Positions 41-10,958 of a stretch of DNA of 11,607 nucleotides are shown piece by piece (position 1 is the first letter of the stretch; each line of letters opens with the position of its first letter). The stretch comes from Octopus sinensis (taxonomy: Eukaryota): positions 1 through 11,607 of the forward strand of contig NW_021826744.1 of the NCBI RefSeq assembly GCF_006345805.1, read 5' to 3'. The position numbers were made by a program, and so were the translations under genes. The notes beneath the pieces are model-generated. The model did not search any database, was not told the origin of the DNA, and worked only from the letters and a program-made list of their open reading frames with translations.

Positions 41-232
41 TAAGGTGGCGAGCTGACAGAATCGTTACTGCGCCAGGCAAAGTACTTAACGGCATTTCTT
101 CCGTCTTTACGTTCTGCGTTCAAATGCCGCCGGGGTCGACTTTGCCTTTCACCCCTTCGAGATCGATAAACTAATTGCCAGTTGAATATTGAGGTCGGTG
201 AAATAGATTCAACCGCATCCTCTTCAAATTAG
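41..232 (+). mobile_element. tRNA-derived SINE, family A (diverged, near full length)
   Basis: The head TAAGGTGGCGAGCTGACAGAATCGTT is A-box-like and GTTCAAATGCC (118-128) is B-box-like. The body GGGGTCGACTTTGCCTTTCA...TCGATAAA recurs at 1910, 7249, 8628 and 10826. The 3' boundary is approximate. Confidence 0.85.
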
Positions 233-1185: not shown

Positions 1186-1590
1186 AAATTCTCTTTTACT
1201 TGTTTCAGTCATTTGACTGCGGCCATGCTGGAATACTGCCTTTAGTTGAGCAAATCGACCCCAGGGACTTATTCTTTGTAAGCCTAGTACTTATTCTATC
1301 GGTCTCTTTTGCCGAATCGCTAAGTTACGGGGATGTAAACACACCAGCATCGGTTGTCAAGCGATGTTGGGGGGGGGGACAAACACAAACACATACACAC
1401 ACATATATATACAAATATTTATATACGACGAGCTTCTTTCAGTTTCCGTCTACCAAATCCACTCACAATGCCTTTGTCGGCCCGAGGCTATAGCAGAAGA
1501 CACTTGCCCAAGGTGCCACACAGTAGGACTGAAACCAGAACCATATGGTTGGTAAACAAGCTACTTACCACACAGCCACTCCTACGCCTA
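1186..1590 (-). mobile_element. tRNA-derived SINE, family B (CORE-like; resembles octopus OR-type SINEs), full length
   Basis: The reverse complement begins TAGGCGTAGGAGTGGCTGTGTGGTAAG, contains GTGGCACCTTGGGCAAGTG and an internal (TA)/(CA) tract, and ends GTAAAAGAGAATTT. By hand there are 20 mismatches in the first 160 nt versus the copy at 10320. Confidence 0.9.
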
Positions 1591-1825
1591 TTCGTTCAAT
1601 AAGTGTCATTCTTACCACACCATCCCTAGATTCTGTGCATTTCTGCCTTTCAATCTACATGTTGGACTGCATTATGAGCTGATAAGCCGCCTAACTTGTT
1701 TGATTTAGTAATCGGTTATACTAAGTTTAACAATGAATTCTGATGCAAACAACAGACCAGACAGTTTAGGTGAAAGGTTATTTAATATAGATTATGGATG
1801 ATCAAATCGGCGAAATGACTTGACA

Positions 1826-2060: not shown

Positions 2061-2495
2061 GATGATGTTGATGATGATGATGATATGATGATGATGATGA
2101 TGATGATGATGATGGTGAAGGTGATGATGATGATGATAATGATGATGATGATTGATAATGAACAATGATGATCTTTATCATCGTCATTATCATTATCATC
2201 ATCATGACAACGATTTTAATAATGAGGAGGAGGCGGCGGCAGCGGCGGAAGAGGAGGAGGAGGAGGAAGAAGAGAATCTGAATCACTGCCGTCAATTGTC
2301 ATTATCAACGCGTCACCACGACACTCATAGTTTTCATCATCATCATCACAACCATCATCCACACCACCACCACCCACCACCATCATCATCATCATCATCA
2401 CTCTAACCACAACCATAACCATCAGCACCACAACCGCAGTCAAAAACCAAACGACGACCACCCACCACCACCACCACCACCACCACCACCACCAC

Positions 2496-4170: not shown

Positions 4171-4384
4171 TTACGGAGATATACTTGCATAGCAAGTGTC
4201 CTGATCTGAGATCGTGTGCTGGAACGAAAACAATTGCAACGTGGAAGGTGTTTATAAGCCATTTAAGAACCACACAAAAACCATTTGATTTTGTTCAACA
4301 TTTAAATTTAATTTGTCAAAATATTTTCGTCGCTTTGAGACCGCGACCTGTTCACTGACGAATTCCGTGCACACTGCAATTGTT
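4171..4384 (+). mobile_element. Right-truncated MITE-like element (second family)
   Basis: Starts TTACGGAGATATACTTGCATAGC immediately after (TA)n and matches 11179-11219 at 32/41 nt. The internal inverted repeat AACAATTGCA (4229-4238) / TGCAATTGTT (4375-4384) marks where the right TIR begins and is then cut off. Confidence 0.65.
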
Positions 4385-4404
4385 AGATATATATATATTG
4401 TTAG

Positions 4405-4446
<42 letters not shown>

Positions 4447-4515
4447 TATATATATAATTTATTGTTAGATATATATATATATGATTTATTGTTAGATATA
4501 TATATATATATATAT
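4380..4515. repeat. Four tandem units of TTGTTAGAT+(AT)n
   Basis: TTGTTAGAT occurs at 4380, 4398, 4462 and 4489, separated by variable (TA)n. Confidence 0.9.
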
Positions 4516-4906
4516 AATTTCAGCAAAAATTTAGATAAATCTAAAAAACATACAAATAAAAGTAATACGAATAATAACTCTCGTGGGATCAGTAATAATT
4601 CAACTAACCCTAAATCTAATTTAAGAAAATATAATAAAGAAAATATAATCTGGTTGAATGTTCCTTTCAACTACGCGATCTTATCGGATATATACGGCAC
4701 ATTCAAATATTAAATATAACCTAAAATGGGATATAGTTAGAAAGGCAGTACCTTATAGAAATAATAGGGTGAGTTGTCAACTCTGTTCCATGGAGACATA
4801 TGAGATTGTAAAGCATAGAAAAAATAAAAAATCTACTGAATAACCGTATAGAATTAGGTCGTCTTGTATTCACTCAAAAATCAAAACTCTACAATATTTT
4901 AAATAG
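4516..4906 (+). pseudogene. Frameshifted, internally deleted remnant of a Penelope-like element ORF C-terminus (GIY-YIG endonuclease region)
   Basis: Motifs in order across frames: NIIWLNVPFN (4642-4671, cf. PLE IIWFNPPY/F), KYNLKWDIV (from 4712), CQLCSMETYEI (4775-4807, cf. C-x-L-C-x-x-E-K), NLLNNRIEL (from 4830, cf. LLNKRSEL) and SCIHSK...YFK* ending at 4906. No GIY/YIG motif lies between the first two. Confidence 0.8.
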
Positions 4907-5842
4907 AAATCTGTTGGTTCTCCCACTGGTGTTCTTTCTAACTATACCTTTTTAATATAAAAATAAATAGTATTTGTACTATGCTAACTTTTAATTGACT
5001 CTATAGTCAATTTAATTAACCTTACTTAAATCATATAAATTGCTAATCTTTCTTAATTCTATTCTAAATTTAATATGTAATACTATTCCCTTAATGATAC
5101 ATTTAATTTTCACTATGAATTTTGAATAAGTAAAATTCCCCAACAAATTGCTATTGAATTCATTTGACCTCTAGATGTCGACCTAAATTCTTTCTTACAA
5201 TATATAAACATAAGTTAAAATAGAAACAATAATAAATAAATAACCTTCTATTCTAATGTTATCCTTAACTTTCTTACTGTATCTTCCTCTACTGATAACC
5301 TGTGACCCCTTTAGTGTTTTCCTTTGATCTCTCTGTATTCTTTATCCCACCATTAACTCTGTGAGCTTCTAAGTTCAGAGCTAGCCGTGATTAAACTTAC
5401 TCTTCTTTTATGAATTTAAGATTCCTTCAACACCGACCTAGATTTTCTGTCACCACAGAAATAGACTAACCTTTGTCTGTGGCATCTTTATTCCCTCTTA
5501 CTCCCCCACTTCTTTCCTCCCATAAGGTCCTTTACTTTGGCTAAACCTACCTCGCTGTCTTTCTTGCTACTATAAAATTCTGTCTGCAACAGTTAGATGT
5601 GAACTGAACCGGTGTGTGACCAGTATCTTTCCTCATGTCTCCTGGAACTTATACCTGCATCTTTATGGATGGATTTACCTTCTCTGAGAAGTTAATAATC
5701 ATTTTAAAAACATTTTTTTAAAAACTGTGCATTGTTGGAAAACATATAAAGTCTGCTTATAATCTTACTTCAAATTCATAGAACTCACTCCTAATACTTC
5801 ATAAGGATATTTACACTCTCTAGGATGTTGAAAAACATATAT

Positions 5843-5937
5843 GTGATTTAGCTGATGAATACTTGACATTATATTTGCTGTAATATTTGCAGCTTTAAAT
5901 AAAATGTTCTTAGTATGAAACAATTATACTAAACTAC
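5843..5937 (+). ncRNA. Type I hammerhead ribozyme motif (minimal stem III, extended stem II)
   Basis: Stem I TTTAG (5847-5851) / CTAAA (5929-5933), plus 3 bp beyond one mismatch. Core CTGATGA at 5852-5858. Stem II ATACT (5859-5863) / AGTAT (5912-5916). GAAA at 5917-5920. Stem III A-C-AATT-A-T. Cleavage triplet ATA at 5926-5928. Confidence 0.8.
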
Positions 5938-5967
5938 TGATCCATTCTTGTTACTTTTTTCTTGGTT

Positions 5968-6420
5968 TATATATATATATTTATATATATATATATATAT
6001 TATACATAAATACATATTGTTATGTATATGTGTGTGTATATATATATATACATATAAGTGTGTGTTTGTATATGTGTGTATGCATACACACACACACACG
6101 TGCATATCTGCAAATGTGCATATAAATGTGTGCGTGTCTCACTCTACGTGTGTGTGTGTATGCTAATGTTCGTATACACTCATAAATACATATGCATTGA
6201 TACGTTTATATATATATATTTTCATTTATACACACACACATAAAAACATGTATGTGTGTAAGTTATGTTTGCATGCATGCATGTATGCATGTATGCATGT
6301 ATATATGTATATATGCATGTAAGTATGCATGCATGCATGTATGTATTATGTATGTATGCATGCATGTAAATGTATGTATGAATATATGTATGTATGCATG
6401 CATGTATGTATGTATGTTAT
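5968..6420. repeat. Compound (TA)n/(TG)n/(CA)n/(ATGT)n/(ATGC)n microsatellite
   Basis: Directly visible. Confidence 0.93.
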
Positions 6421-7248: not shown

Positions 7249-7673
7249 TAATACCTATTTCTTTATTACCCACAAGGGGCTAAACACAGAGGGGACAAAC
7301 AAGGACATACATAGGTATTAAGTCGATTACATCGACCCCAGTGCGTAACTGGTACTTAATTTATCGACCCCGAAAGGACGAAAGGCAAAGTCGACCTCGG
7401 CGGAATTTGAACTCAGAACGTAACGGCAGACGAAATACCTATTTCTTTACTACCCGCAAGGGGCTAAACACAGAGAGGACAAACAGGGACAGACATAGGT
7501 ATTAAGTCGATTACATCGACCCAAGTGCGTAACTGGTACTTAATTTATCGACCCCGAAAGGACGAAAGGCAAAGTCGACCTCGGCGGAATTTGAACTCAG
7601 AACGTAACGGCAGACGAAATACCGCTAAGCATTTCGCCCGGCGTGCTAACGTTTCTGCCAGCTCGCCGCCTTA
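7249..7673 (-). mobile_element. Young family A SINE with a tandemly duplicated 184-bp body
   Basis: The head (reverse complement TAAGGCGGCGAGCTGGCAGAAACGTTAG, from 7673) is followed by two units, 7434-7617 and 7250-7433. Each contains the B-box-like GAGTTCAAATTCC. The units differ at 6 positions. Confidence 0.92.
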
Positions 7674-8627: not shown

Positions 8628-8822
8628 GCTGAAATCCTTAGCGGTATTTTGTATGTCTTTACGTTCTGAGTTCAAATTTCGCCACGGTTGACTTTGTCTT
8701 TCATCCTTTCGAGTTCAATTAAATAAGTACCAGTTACACACCGAGGTCGATGTAATCAACTTAATCCCTTTGTCTGTCCTTGTTTGTCCCCTCTATGTTT
8801 AACTCCCTGTGGGCAATAATGA
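8628..8822 (+). mobile_element. 5'-truncated family A SINE running into a (TAT)n tail
   Basis: CTTAGCGGTATT...GTTCTGAGTTCAAAT...AAGTACCAGTTAC...TTTGTCCCCTCTATGTTTAAC...GGGCAATAATGAA is the reverse-complement homologue of the 7250/7434 units. Confidence 0.85.
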
Positions 8823-8890
<68 letters not shown>

Positions 8891-9117: not shown

Positions 9118-10032
9118 CCTTCGTAACATAGTGTAGGTAAAAATGCCTCGGAATTTTTAGTCATTTGTCAAGTCACAACAAGGACCTCAGACAGATTATT
9201 CTTTCCTTAAGATGTGCGCTGCGCCCAATAAGGCTGCTTTTTGCAAGACATCAATCTTGCATGGGATTTCCAGTTGCCTTAAGAAGTTTTGAAATTTCAG
9301 TGGGATTGATCCCAGCGCTCCGGTCATCACTGGTATCACTTTTACATTACCCTCTCGCATTCCATACAGTCTTGCCATTTCCACTTTTAATTCGGAGTAC
9401 TTGGTGATTTTTTTCAAGCTCTTTACTTACAACATTCATGCCATTTGGTATGGCTACATCAATGATCTGATAGTATTTGTCTCTCTTATTCAATATGACA
9501 ATATCGGCCGACGGTGTTCGATTACACGATCCATCTGAAAATCATAGTCCCAGAGTGTCGTTACATTTTCACCTGCCTGCGTAACTTTACTTGGTACATG
9601 CTCATACCAGTTCTCTGTTAACTCATATTGGTATTTACGGCGTAAGAACCAACAAAGATACACTCAAACTCTATCGTGGCGGCGCTTGTATTCTTTTTGT
9701 GCAAGGCTCTCACATCCACGTACCAAGTGGGTCACATTTTCCACACTCTTTCCACAGAGTTTGCATGTCTGGGTGTCAGAAGTTTTATAGATGTTATACT
9801 TCACTGAATTGGTAGCGAGAGTCTGGCCCTGTGCAGCAATGATCAGGCTTTCGGTGGTACGATTCAAATCACCTCGCTGAAGCCATTCCCACGTTGCTGT
9901 ATTATCCTTAACGTCCTGTGTACACCTTTCAAACTTTACATGCATTCTCATTTCAAGAAAGTCTTCTTTTCTCTTCTCCTCAGGTCTTTGGTTAAACTCT
10001 TCCTTGCCCATCATTTCATCTGCAGTTACACC

Positions 10033-10033
<1 letters not shown>
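9118..10033 (-). mobile_element. 5'-truncated, inactivated RLE-type non-LTR retrotransposon (R4/Dong-like)
   Basis: The minus strand encodes WLQRGDL...TESLIIAAQGQ, a CCHC knuckle CKLC-x8-H-x4-C, YKRRHDRV, WYEH-x-P, LWD, RP/DIV...IIDVAIP...KELEK/ITKY (PD-D-K endonuclease), PV-x-x-GALG and LQKAALLGAAHILRK*, followed by a ~75-nt 3' UTR. Lesions: TGA at 9666-9664, a -1 shift near 9506, and a +1 shift in the A7 run at 9414-9408. Confidence 0.88.
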
Positions 10034-10081
<48 letters not shown>

Positions 10082-10179: not shown

Positions 10180-10319
10180 CTGGAGAGGGGAAATGGCAGG
10201 GGCAGTAGCGAAATATCTTCATGAAATAAAACGCAAACATTTAAATTGATAGGGTTTTTCTAAGGATGAGGGCAGTATATATCAACACAAACTTTTGGAT
10301 TTCTGACAATTACTGACCA

Positions 10320-10492
10320 TAGGCGCAGGAGTGGCTTTATCGTAAGTAGCTTGCTTACCAACCACATGATTCCAGGTTCAGTCCCACTGCGTGGCACCTT
10401 GGGCAAATGTCTTTTACTATAGCCTCGGACCGACCAAGGCCTTGTGAGTGGATTTGGTAGACGGAAACTGACAGAAGCCCGTCGTATATATG

Positions 10493-10541
<49 letters not shown>

Positions 10542-10758
10542 TTGTGTGTCTGTGTTTGTCCCCCCAACATCGCTTGACAACCGATGCTGGAGTGTTTATG
10601 TCCCCGTAACGTAGCAGTTCGGCAAAACAGACCGATAGAATAAGTACTAGGCTTATAAAGAGTAAGTCCTGGGGTCGATTTGCTCAACTAAAGGCGGTGC
10701 TCCAGCATGGCTGCAGTCAAATGACTGAAACAAGTAAAGAGAGAGTAAAAGAGAATTT
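10320..10758 (+). mobile_element. tRNA-derived SINE, family B, full length
   Basis: TAGGCGCAGGAGTGGC head, B-box-like GGTTCAGTCCC, GTGGCACCTTGGGCAA core, internal (TA)(TG) tract and (GTAAAAGAGA)2 tail. It is an inverted homologue of 1186-1590. Confidence 0.9.
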
Positions 10759-10825
10759 AAATGTCTGTGTCGTCATACATGAAGCTATTTCGATGGTGTG
10801 CACGAATGGTTACATTCGGAATCAA

Positions 10826-10958
10826 GGGATTAAGTCGATTACAACGACCCCAGTGCATAACTGGTACTTTATTTATCAACCCCGAAAGGATGAAATGCAA
10901 AGTCGACCTCGGCGGAATTTGAACTCAGAAAGTAGCATTTCTGGCAGCTCGCCATTTT
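10826..10958 (-). mobile_element. Family A SINE with a deletion inside the head
   Basis: The body matches the 7250 unit (ATTAAGTCGATTAC...AAAGTCGACCTCGGCGGAATTTGAACTCAGAA). It then jumps directly to TTTCTGGCAGCTCGCC, skipping about 45 nt present at 7605-7650. Confidence 0.85.

What the first reader, a model, noticed from the sequence alone, without database searches (positions are those of the whole stretch)
5843..5937. Hammerhead ribozyme with a long four-helix stem II at the 3' end of a Penelope-derived element
Seen in sequence: all core nucleotides are in type I order (CUGAUGA 5852-58, GAAA 5917-20, UH 5927-28), with a closing stem I of 5 bp plus 3 bp. Stem II is not a short hairpin but a ~58-nt arm of stacked helices: ATACT/AGTAT, ACATT/AATGT (5866-70/5903-07), TATTT/AAATA (5872-76/5897-5901) and GCTGTA/TGCAGC (5877-82/5888-93). 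Stem III is ACAATTAT, one G>A change from the palindrome ACAATTGT. Established: Penelope-like elements carry minimal type I hammerheads whose palindromic stem III loop supports cleavage as a dimer. Inference: this is the processing ribozyme of the element, possibly weakened in this copy (ATA instead of GTA triplet, C-A mismatch). The long stem II could be a family-specific module for tertiary contact, dimerisation or RT recognition. The class is known; this architecture or family may not be described.
Basis: partly seen in the sequence, partly recalled or inferred. Interest (0 to 1): 0.85.

Follow-up and report, generated by a model that had tools for sequence, protein, structure and literature searches.

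The report
Retrotransposon hammerhead relic with oversized stem
This is the decayed self-cleaving RNA (hammerhead) motif at the tail of a broken Penelope-like jumping gene; its second stem is about 58 bases long instead of about 12, an uncommon variant of a well-known kind of ribozyme.

Summary
My loose hammerhead descriptor hits once in the window against 0.0005 expected per shuffled window.

The context claim holds. Positions 4609-4894 are the linker and C-terminal endonuclease remnant of a Hydra-clade Penelope-like element (PLE). The copy is 5'-truncated, internally deleted, and lies between two (TA)n tracts.

Related Hydra-clade elements carry ordinary type I hammerheads near their 3' ends. 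They share the same GAAAC...GU(A/U/C) half.

The closest relative with enough downstream DNA (L001, from a host sharing a SINE family with the window) has CTGATGA, 58 nt, GAAAC, N4, GTA. The spacing is identical to the window's (expected by chance 1.5e-5).

The four-helix pairing of the long arm is not conserved in L001. Only its length, the cores, proximal stem I (two compensatory pairs) and the stem III closing pair are conserved.

This copy is probably catalytically dead or weak. It has a C·A mismatch in stem III, an A-U pair at 10.1/11.1, a competing 9-bp hairpin, and no partner motif.

Verdict: a real hammerhead relic and a new variant of a known kind. Genomic copies could not be retrieved, so family-wide covariation is untested.

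The parts
4384..4520 (.). (TA)n-rich microsatellite on the 5' side of the element; presumed insertion target
   Evidence: The Hydra clade inserts into (TA)n (PMC8557442).
4609..4704 (+). Remnant of the PLE linker between RT and endonuclease (PKSNLRKYNKENIIWLNVPFNYAILSDIYGTF)
   Evidence: tblastn against P0031 aa 164-195, E 0.007, and P0092, E 0.061. L001 carries the same 'WFNVPF' segment.
4706..4894 (+). Remnant of the C-terminal end of the GIY-YIG-type endonuclease (NIKYNLKWDIVRKAVPYRNNRVSCQLCSMETYEIV...SSCIHS), with one in-frame stop. About 136 aa, including the CxCX5C motif and the catalytic core, are deleted at 4704/4706.
   Evidence: phmmer against representative proteins, best E 2e-6; alignment A1; tblastn against P0007 E 5e-13 and P0006 E 1e-8.
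4895..5842 (+). Long non-coding 3' region of the element. It cannot be aligned with L001 apart from one short box.
   Evidence: No ORF and no protein match. Local alignment z = 0.5-0.7.
5804..5822 (+). Short box GGATATTTACACTCTCTAG, shared with L001 2340-2358 at a similar distance upstream of the core
   Evidence: z = 2.9; 5 of 300 shuffles as good. A weaker echo occurs in L039.
5843..5851 (+). Stem I, 5' strand (GTGATTTAG)
   Evidence: The proximal 4 pairs are kept in L001, two through compensatory changes.
5852..5858 (+). Hammerhead core C3-A9 (CUGAUGA)
   Evidence: It is the only CTGATGA in the window and is identical in L001.
5859..5916 (+). Stem II: a 58-nt arm (5 + 5 + 5 + 6 bp with internal loops; apical loop 5883-5887)
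   Evidence: z = -4.0. L001 has the same 58-nt length, but the pairing is not conserved there.
5917..5920 (+). Core G12 A13 A14 A15.1 (GAAA)
   Evidence: GAAAC is conserved in L001, L036, L037, L038 and L039.
5920..5927 (+). Stem III / loop 3, ACAATTAT: an A15.1-U16.1 pair, a C15.2.A16.2 mismatch, and loop AAUU. It differs by one transition from the palindrome ACAATTGT found in L039.
   Evidence: Self-duplex energy is +0.6 kcal/mol against -6.4 for the G form.
5928..5928 (+). H17 (A). The predicted cleavage is between 5928 and 5929.
   Evidence: Inferred from the motif geometry. GUA is also the triplet in L001, L037 and L038.
5929..5937 (+). Stem I, 3' strand (CTAAACTAC)
5938..5967 (+). 3' terminal tail of the element. 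The (TA)n begins 40 nt after the predicted cleavage site, against 36 nt in the L037 copy.
5968..6000 (.). (TA)n microsatellite on the 3' side of the element

Best explanation
The 5843-5937 segment is the 3'-terminal type I hammerhead module of a Hydra-clade Penelope-like retrotransposon, in a sub-lineage where stem II has grown from the usual 4-5 bp hairpin to a 58-nt arm. In an active ancestor the element's transcript, on the same strand as the ORF, would fold stems I and II around the CUGAUGA/GAAA core. Stem III is too short to hold as a monomer. It would form by pairing its palindrome (ancestrally ACAAUUGU) with that of a second copy, in a tandem transcript or in trans. Cleavage would then fall after U16.1-H17, about 40 nt from the element's 3' end. 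The copy in this window is a dead relic. It is 5'-truncated, lacks the endonuclease core, and has no partner motif within 5.6 kb or more on either side. It has lost the C15.2-G16.2 pair (G to A at 5926), has A-U instead of G-C at 10.1/11.1, and prefers a competing hairpin. It most likely no longer cleaves. Shown here: the motif, its improbability by chance, the PLE context, the matching position and sequence halves in relatives, and the recurrence of the 58-nt spacing. Inferred: self-cleavage, dimeric action, and any role for the arm.
For: Motif and chance level. The arm is unusually stable and is more stable on the + strand. PLE (Hydra-clade) remnant upstream on the same strand, flanked by (TA)n. 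Related elements carry hammerheads with the same GAAAC-loop-GU(A/U/C) half on the ORF strand downstream of the ORF. Where the 3' end could be read (L037), the (TA)n starts 36 nt after the cleavage site, against 40 nt in the window. L039 has GAAAC AATT GT, so its stem III is ACAATTGT, one transition from the window's ACAATTAT. L001 holds the closest endonuclease remnant (E 5e-13) and comes from a host sharing a SINE family with the window. About 1 kb downstream of the ORF end, as in the window, it has CTGATGA + 58 nt + GAAAC + N4 + GTA. The expected number of such matches by chance is 1.5e-5 for the exact architecture and about 0.008 for a loose version. The surrounding 3' regions are otherwise unalignable, so the cores and spacing stand out as conserved. 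Stem I proximal pairs covary (G-C to A-U and U-A to G-C), and RNAalifold recovers stem I on its own.
Against: No Rfam hammerhead model matches. This carries little weight, because the ordinary-looking hammerheads of L036, L037 and L038 are not detected either. Only two sequences carry the long arm. The G10.1-C11.1 pair, highly conserved in natural hammerheads (PMC4209133), is A-U here. In the window copy the hammerhead fold is about 3.4 kcal/mol worse than the best fold. No cleavage data exist. The role of hammerheads in PLE transposition is unresolved (PMC11167929, PMC8557442).
Confidence: 0.75

Rival explanations
1. The module descends from a hammerhead but no longer works as a ribozyme in this sub-lineage. 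On this reading, the 58-nt insertion in loop II was a one-off event in the common ancestor of the window and L001 families. The cores persist because the region serves another purpose, such as a structured 3' signal recognised by the element's RT/EN, or because only these two decayed copies have been seen.
For: The arm pairing is not conserved between the two copies, and the L001 arm is no more stable than shuffles. The stem II base is weak in L001, and is A-U at 10.1/11.1 in the window. Hammerhead cleavage was dispensable for insertion by a vertebrate PLE in vitro (PMC11167929). A short shared box lies just upstream.
Against: CUGAUGA, GAAAC and the U16.1-H17 dinucleotide (UA in both copies; position 16.2 is A in the window and G in L001) are all kept, while the rest of the 3' region has diverged beyond alignment. 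Stem I covaries. This pattern is what selection on the catalytic fold would produce. It is general knowledge, not tested here, that stem II extensions are tolerated by hammerheads.
Confidence: 0.2
2. The motif is a chance look-alike in AT-rich non-coding DNA: a stable hairpin that happens to be flanked by CTGATGA and GAAA.
For: AT-rich sequence pairs easily. There is no Rfam hit. The exact pattern CTGATGAATACT..AGTATGAAA also occurs at random in bacterial and metagenomic DNA.
Against: The expected number is 0.0005 per window. The same architecture recurs in L001 with identical spacing (1.5e-5 expected). The motif is on the ORF strand, at the position where Hydra-clade relatives carry their hammerheads, and shares GAAAC AATT with L039.
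Confidence: 0.05

Closest known systems
Hammerheads of Hydra-clade Penelope-like elements (Craig, Yushenova, Rodriguez and Arkhipova 2021, PMC8557442); examples seen here in L036-L039
   Same: Same element clade: C-terminal endonuclease with CxxC and CxH motifs, and (TA)n targets. The motif is type I, on the ORF strand, near the 3' end. It has the same GAAAC-short loop-GU(A/U/C) half with a (near-)palindromic stem III. L039 has the identical GAAAC AATT.
   Different: The relatives have stem II of 4-5 bp with a 4-6 nt loop, and their hammerheads start within about 200 nt of the stop codon. The window and L001 have a 58-nt stem II and lie about 1 kb from the ORF end. The window copy has A-U at 10.1/11.1 and a C.A mismatch at 15.2/16.2.
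Minimal PLE hammerheads that act as dimers (Cervera and de la Pena 2014, PMC4209133; Lunse, Weinberg and Breaker 2017, cited in PMC6765202)
   Same: They are associated with PLEs, are type I, have stem III reduced to 1-2 bp with a palindromic sequence, and are predicted to need two copies. Stem II is 'larger than usual'.
   Different: There, 'larger' means 6-8 bp, a bulged nucleotide follows A9, and G10.1-C11.1 is highly conserved. In the window, stem II has 21 bp over 58 nt, there is no bulge, and 10.1/11.1 is A-U.
Type I hammerheads of metazoan retrozymes and satellite repeats (newt, Schistosoma, mussel, coral, axolotl; PMC7229834)
   Same: [quoted passage not shown]
   Different: Those occur in short tandem repeats of 170-400 nt, with 4-bp stem II and loop-loop contacts. 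The window has a single copy at the end of a PLE remnant, with no tandem repeat.
'HHR_half_core' cases in Naiad PLEs (PMC8557442, Methods)
   Same: The two halves of the catalytic core are separated by a much longer distance than usual (35-50 nt there, 58 nt here), in the 3' UTR of a PLE.
   Different: Naiads have an N-terminal endonuclease. The authors did not treat those cases as hammerheads and describe no stems. I could not inspect their sequences.

Membership tests
Hammerhead ribozyme, type I | Core C3 U4 G5 A6 N7 G8 A9 | tested here: met
   CUGAUGA at 5852-5858
Hammerhead ribozyme, type I | Core G12 A13 A14, with A15.1 paired to U16.1, followed by H17 (not G) | tested here: met
   GAAA 5917-5920; U5927; A5928
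Hammerhead ribozyme, type I | Stems I and II abut the core, in the order stem I 5' strand / core / stem II / GAAA / stem III / UH / stem I 3' strand | tested here: met
   Stem I is 5 + 3 bp. Stem II closes with 5 bp directly next to A9 and G12.
Hammerhead ribozyme, type I | A stem III that can form, either as a hairpin or between two copies | tested here: not met
   Only the A15.1-U16.1 pair forms; 15.2/16.2 is C.A. The self-duplex of ACAAUUAU is +0.6 kcal/mol against -6.4 for ACAAUUGU. The feature is met in relatives L001 (C-G closing pair only; its ACAUCCGU is not self-complementary, -0.3 kcal/mol), L037 and L039.
Hammerhead ribozyme, type I | G10.1-C11.1 pair at the base of stem II | tested here: not met
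   A5859-U5916 in the window. It is G-C in L037 and L039, G-U in L038, and C.C in L001 (or G-C if a bulged C is allowed).
Hammerhead ribozyme, type I | Match to the curated covariance models (Rfam Hammerhead families) | tested here: inconclusive
   No hit at E<=10. The ordinary-looking hammerheads of related elements are missed as well.
Hammerhead ribozyme, type I | Covariation supporting the stems across homologues | tested here: inconclusive
   Only one homologue (L001) shares the architecture. Stem I has two compensatory pairs. The stem II arm is not supported (17 of 31 pairs against 12.9 +/- 2.7).
Hammerhead ribozyme, type I | Mg2+-dependent self-cleavage 3' of H17 | not testable with these tools
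   Needs in vitro transcription, or mapping of RNA ends.
PLE-associated dimeric hammerhead | Lies in the terminal repeat or 3' end of a Penelope-like element, on the element's sense strand | tested here: met
   It lies about 950 nt downstream of the endonuclease remnant on the + strand and 40 nt before the flanking (TA)n.
PLE-associated dimeric hammerhead | Palindromic 15.2-16.2 / loop 3 | tested here: inconclusive
   ACAATTAT is one transition short of a palindrome. L039 has the perfect ACAATTGT. L001's ACATCCGT is not palindromic.
PLE-associated dimeric hammerhead | Unpaired nucleotide between A9 and 10.1, and stem II of about 6-8 bp (PMC4209133) | tested here: not met
   There is no bulge, and stem II has 21 bp over 58 nt.
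PLE-associated dimeric hammerhead | A second copy nearby (tandem or pseudo-LTR arrangement) | tested here: not met
   This is the only hammerhead-like site in the 11.6-kb window, even with a relaxed descriptor. Nothing in the window repeats 5700-5940.
Hydra clade of Penelope-like elements (for the host element) | RT followed by a C-terminal GIY-YIG endonuclease without the CCHH motif; CxCX5C linker; CxxC and CxH around the conserved E and N; insertion into (TA)n (PMC8557442) | tested here: met
   The window keeps CQLC...E...CIH and the (TA)n flanks; its RT and CxCX5C are deleted or truncated. Family members P0031, P0090 and P0006 show RT motifs, CNCRx5C, CxxC and CRH.

The most novel reading that the evidence does not exclude
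A lineage of Hydra-clade Penelope-like elements, apparently in a mollusc-like host, maintains an active hammerhead whose stem II is a ~58-nt arm. On this reading the internal loop 5 bp from the core replaces loop II, and the arm serves as a protein-binding or dimerisation platform. By extension, PLE families scored as 'hammerhead-less' or 'half-core', such as Naiads, may carry overlooked hammerheads with expanded stems that standard descriptors and Rfam models cannot see.
Probability: 0.25. Interest if true: 0.6.

Novelty: new variant of a known kind. Interest (0 to 1): 0.4.

Why it matters
Hammerheads in Penelope-like elements are well known, so the class is not new. Two points give the finding some value.

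First, a stem II about 50 nt longer than any described for PLE or retrozyme hammerheads is invisible to the usual descriptors and to Rfam. Counts of 'hammerhead-negative' PLE families may therefore be underestimates. The unexplained 'half-core' cases in Naiads become a concrete thing to re-examine.

Second, the cores and the exact spacing are kept between two elements whose 3' regions are otherwise unalignable. This is indirect evidence that the hammerhead is under selection in PLEs, where its role is still debated.

The particular copy in this window is a dead relic of no functional consequence.

Tried and rejected
1. Rfam cmscan on the whole window and on a 211-nt slice gave no hammerhead. 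The same negative result for the ordinary-looking hammerheads of L036-L038 shows this test is uninformative here.

2. A covariance model (R1) built from the L037/L038 hammerheads was too sequence-specific. It did not recover the L036 hammerhead as a hammerhead (only a 6.7-bit partial overlap at 5415-5454, E = 8), nor the window or L001. MAFFT misaligned L036, so a broader seed could not be made.

3. Collecting genomic copies failed:
- The word-indexed protein search with the remnant found nothing.
- A profile of the closest remnants found only four short contigs.
- Exact-product look-ups of window ORFs found nothing.
- DNA pattern scans of the viral, metagenome and bacterial/archaeal genome collections returned only unrelated chance matches.

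4. L002, L034 and L040 were too short or had no hammerhead core downstream.

5. The region 4895-5842 shows no coding signal and no similarity to L001 beyond one 19-nt box.

6. I considered a Naiad (N-terminal endonuclease) origin because of the (TA)n flanks. I rejected it because family members have the RT upstream of the endonuclease.

7. The Rfam microRNA and snoRNA hits in the window are microsatellite artefacts below the gathering score.

8. The host organism could not be established; the SRA run of L001 appears in no held paper.

Full report
**The observation.**
- Core: CUGAUGA at 5852-5858.
- Stem II: a 58-nt arm at 5859-5916, made of 5 + 5 + 5 + 6 bp.
- Second core half: GAAA at 5917-5920.
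- Stem III region: C5921, AAUU, A5926, U5927, then A5928 as H17.
- Stem I: 5 bp (5847-5851/5929-5933), then an A.C mismatch, then 3 bp.

The order of parts is that of a type I hammerhead. A deliberately loose descriptor finds this site and no other on either strand. It gave 0.0005 hits per dinucleotide-shuffled window and none in 2000 block shuffles. An even looser version also finds only this site. The arm alone is an unusually stable hairpin: -14.8 kcal/mol, z = -4.0, with 0 of 200 shuffles as stable. It is weaker on the opposite strand (-9.4 kcal/mol), which fits a structure read on the + strand.

**Points against the fold.** No Rfam hammerhead family matches, even at E<=10 on a 211-nt slice. 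The free fold of 5843-5937 prefers a 9-bp hairpin (5910-5918/5924-5932) that sequesters GAAA and the cleavage site. The hammerhead-compatible fold is 3.4 kcal/mol worse, and stem I and the stem II base have about 6-7% pairing probability.

**Context.** The window is eukaryotic repeat-rich DNA, with microsatellites and two SINE-like families.

Upstream on the same strand, 4609-4704 and 4706-4894 encode two remnants: PKSNLRKYNKENIIWLNVPF...GTF, and NIKYNLKWDIVRKAVPYRNNRVSCQLCSMETYEIV...SSCIHS. An exhaustive phmmer search placed the second remnant in a large family (best E 2e-6; alignment A1).

Longer members of that family (P0031, P0090) carry, in order:
- RT motifs (FISFDIVEFYPSI, MGS..GA, YRDDGL, FLDV);
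- the NIIWFNPPYS linker;
- a CNCRx5C motif;
- a GIY-YIG-like core;
- CxLC...EK...LNKRSE..CRH.

This is the layout and motif set that Craig et al. 2021 describe for the Hydra clade of Penelope-like elements: a CxCX5C linker, CxxC and CxH around the conserved E and N, no CCHH motif, and insertion into (TA)n (PMC8557442). Their supplementary alignment shows Hydra-1_aJap 'ISFDIVE.F.P.S'.

tblastn maps the window remnants to P0031 aa 164-195 and 332-372, and to P0007 with E 5e-13. About 136 aa are missing between them, and no RT is present. The block 4521-5967 lies between two (TA)n tracts.

So 'the 3' end of a Penelope-derived element' is right. The copy is 5'-truncated and internally deleted.

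**Hammerheads of related elements.** I fetched DNA around family members.

| Locus (position) | Stem I 5' | Core | Stem II | GAAA + stem III | Triplet / stem I 3' |
|---|---|---|---|---|---|
| L037 (two inverted copies) | TCTGT | CTGACGA | GTGC CTTC GCAC | GAAAC TCAGA | GTA ACAGA |
| L038 | not given | CTGATGA | GTGT GTAA GCAT | GAAAC TCAGT | GTA |
| L036 | not given | CAGATGA | not given | GAAAC ATTAAT | GTC |
| L039 (two copies) | GTCA | CTGAAGA | GCGCC CCTGT GGTGC | GAAAC AATT | GTT TGAC |

In one L037 copy, 36 nt follow the cleavage site before the (TA)n.

All four are type I, lie on the ORF strand, and start within about 200 nt downstream of the stop codon. All have a 4-5 bp stem II and a short, (near-)palindromic stem III.

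The window matches this pattern in position: the (TA)n starts 40 nt after the predicted cut. It also matches in the GAAAC-loop-[G/A]U-H half.

None of these ordinary-looking hammerheads is detected by Rfam either. The negative Rfam result for the window therefore carries little weight.

**The long arm recurs once.** L001 is a 2.5-kb Logan contig that holds the closest endonuclease remnant. It shares a SINE-like repeat with the window (79-93% identity), so it comes from the same or a related host.

About 1 kb downstream of the ORF end, as in the window, L001 has TAA CTGATGA + 58 nt + GAAAC ATCC GTA TTGC. The 58-nt spacing and the 4-nt loop are identical to the window's. Position 16.2 is G, forming the C-G pair that the window lacks.

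The expected number of such matches in an L001-sized sequence is 1.5e-5 for the exact architecture. It is about 0.008 for a loose version with a 48-68 nt spacer and a 3-6 nt loop.

The two 3' regions are otherwise unalignable (z = 0.5-1). The exception is a 19-nt box 30-50 nt upstream of the core (z = 2.9). The cores and their spacing therefore stand out as conserved.

In stem I the four proximal pairs are kept, two of them through changes on both sides (G-C to A-U and U-A to G-C). RNAalifold recovers this stem independently.

**What is not supported.** The four-helix pairing of the arm is not conserved.
Slid registers score 9-16.
- The two middle helices are mostly broken in L001.
- The L001 arm is no more stable than shuffles (z = 0).
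- The L001 stem II base is C.C, or two G-C pairs if a bulged C is allowed.

With only two copies, both from decayed elements, I cannot tell whether the arm was a selected structure or merely a tolerated insertion of fixed length.

**State of this copy.** Stem III cannot form as a hairpin or as a dimer. The self-duplex is +0.6 kcal/mol, against -6.4 for the G form and -7.4 for L037. The 10.1/11.1 pair is A-U, where PLE and other natural hammerheads keep G-C (PMC4209133). A competing hairpin is favoured. No second hammerhead lies in the window. The element itself is broken. I therefore consider present-day cleavage unlikely.

**Mechanism.** The following is inferred, not shown. In active relatives the sense transcript folds stems I and II around the core. 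Stem III forms between the palindromes of two copies, as proposed for PLE, newt and viroid hammerheads (PMC4209133, PMC6765202). Cleavage would then occur about 40 nt from the 3' end.

What this does for the element is unsettled. Cleavage was dispensable for insertion by a vertebrate PLE in vitro (PMC11167929). Naiads proliferate without canonical hammerheads (PMC8557442).

In the window's fold, the 5-bp stem IIa is followed by an asymmetric internal loop, and the 5-bp stem I by a mismatch. That geometry could mimic the loop II / stem I contact of ordinary type I hammerheads. This is speculation.

**Comparison and novelty.** The class (PLE hammerhead) and the clade (Hydra) are known. 'Large' stem II in the literature means 6-8 bp (PMC4209133; bioRxiv 10.1101/2024.05.16.594327). 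I found no description of a ~58-nt stem II in a PLE or retrozyme hammerhead.

The nearest published hint is the 'HHR_half_core' note for eight Naiads, where the core halves lie 35-50 nt apart (PMC8557442). I rate the finding a new variant of a known kind. Confidence is moderate because family-wide copies could not be retrieved.

**Scores.**

| Quantity | Value |
|---|---|
| Best explanation (real hammerhead relic of a Hydra-clade PLE with expanded stem II) | 0.75 |
| Rival: non-catalytic derivative | 0.2 |
| Rival: chance | 0.05 |
| Interest | 0.4 |

Noticed in passing
window 41-212, 1916-1969, 7250-7433, 7434-7617, 8631-8826 (inverted), 10762-10945: A SINE-like repeat family containing ACTGGTACTTAATTTATCGACCCCGAAAGGACGAAAGGCAAAGTCGACCTCGGC. 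It includes a 97% identical tandem pair at 7250-7617.
   Followed up: no
window 1195-1591 and 10319-10738 (inverted); L001 1-135: A second interspersed repeat, 84-94% complementary between the two window copies. It is also present at the start of the Logan contig L001 (79-93% identity), which links the hosts of the two sequences.
   Followed up: partly
window 9664-10035 (-): A 123-aa ORF resembling the C-terminal zinc-binding part of a non-LTR retrotransposon RT (Pfam zf-RVT, E 0.0038, below the curated cut-off).
   Followed up: no
window 5804-5822; L001 2340-2358; L039 about 1410-1430: A short box, GGATAT(T)TTACACTCT(C/T)TA, lies 30-50 nt upstream of the hammerhead core in the window and in L001 (z = 2.9). 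It is the only alignable stretch of their 3' regions apart from the cores. A weaker echo (TTCATA..GAT.TTTACA) occurs in L039. It may be a second conserved 3' signal.
   Followed up: partly
L037 688-716 (-): A second, minimal-type hammerhead-like motif, CTGATGA A GCC CTCACAA GGC GAAA AGTC, with the bulged A typical of PLE minimal hammerheads. It sits inside a ~95-nt inverted repeat next to the Hydra-clade element.
   Followed up: no
L036 5446 (+) and 2281 (-): A Hydra-clade hammerhead-like motif with CAGAUGA (A instead of U at core position 4) and the perfect palindrome ACATTAATGT in stem III. It is present in two inverted copies starting 17 nt after the ORF stop.
   Followed up: no
window 2120-2206 and 6017-6415: Rfam 'microRNA' and 'snoRNA' matches (mir-598, mir-297, mir-3149 and others) fall on (ATG)n and (TG/TA/TGCA)n microsatellites. 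All are below the gathering scores and are artefacts of simple repeats.
   Followed up: yes
window 5910-5932: A 9-bp hairpin (UUAGUAUGA / UUAUACUAA) arises because ATACT occurs both at the stem II base (5859-5863) and at 5927-5931. It competes with the hammerhead fold with pairing probability about 0.93.
   Followed up: yes
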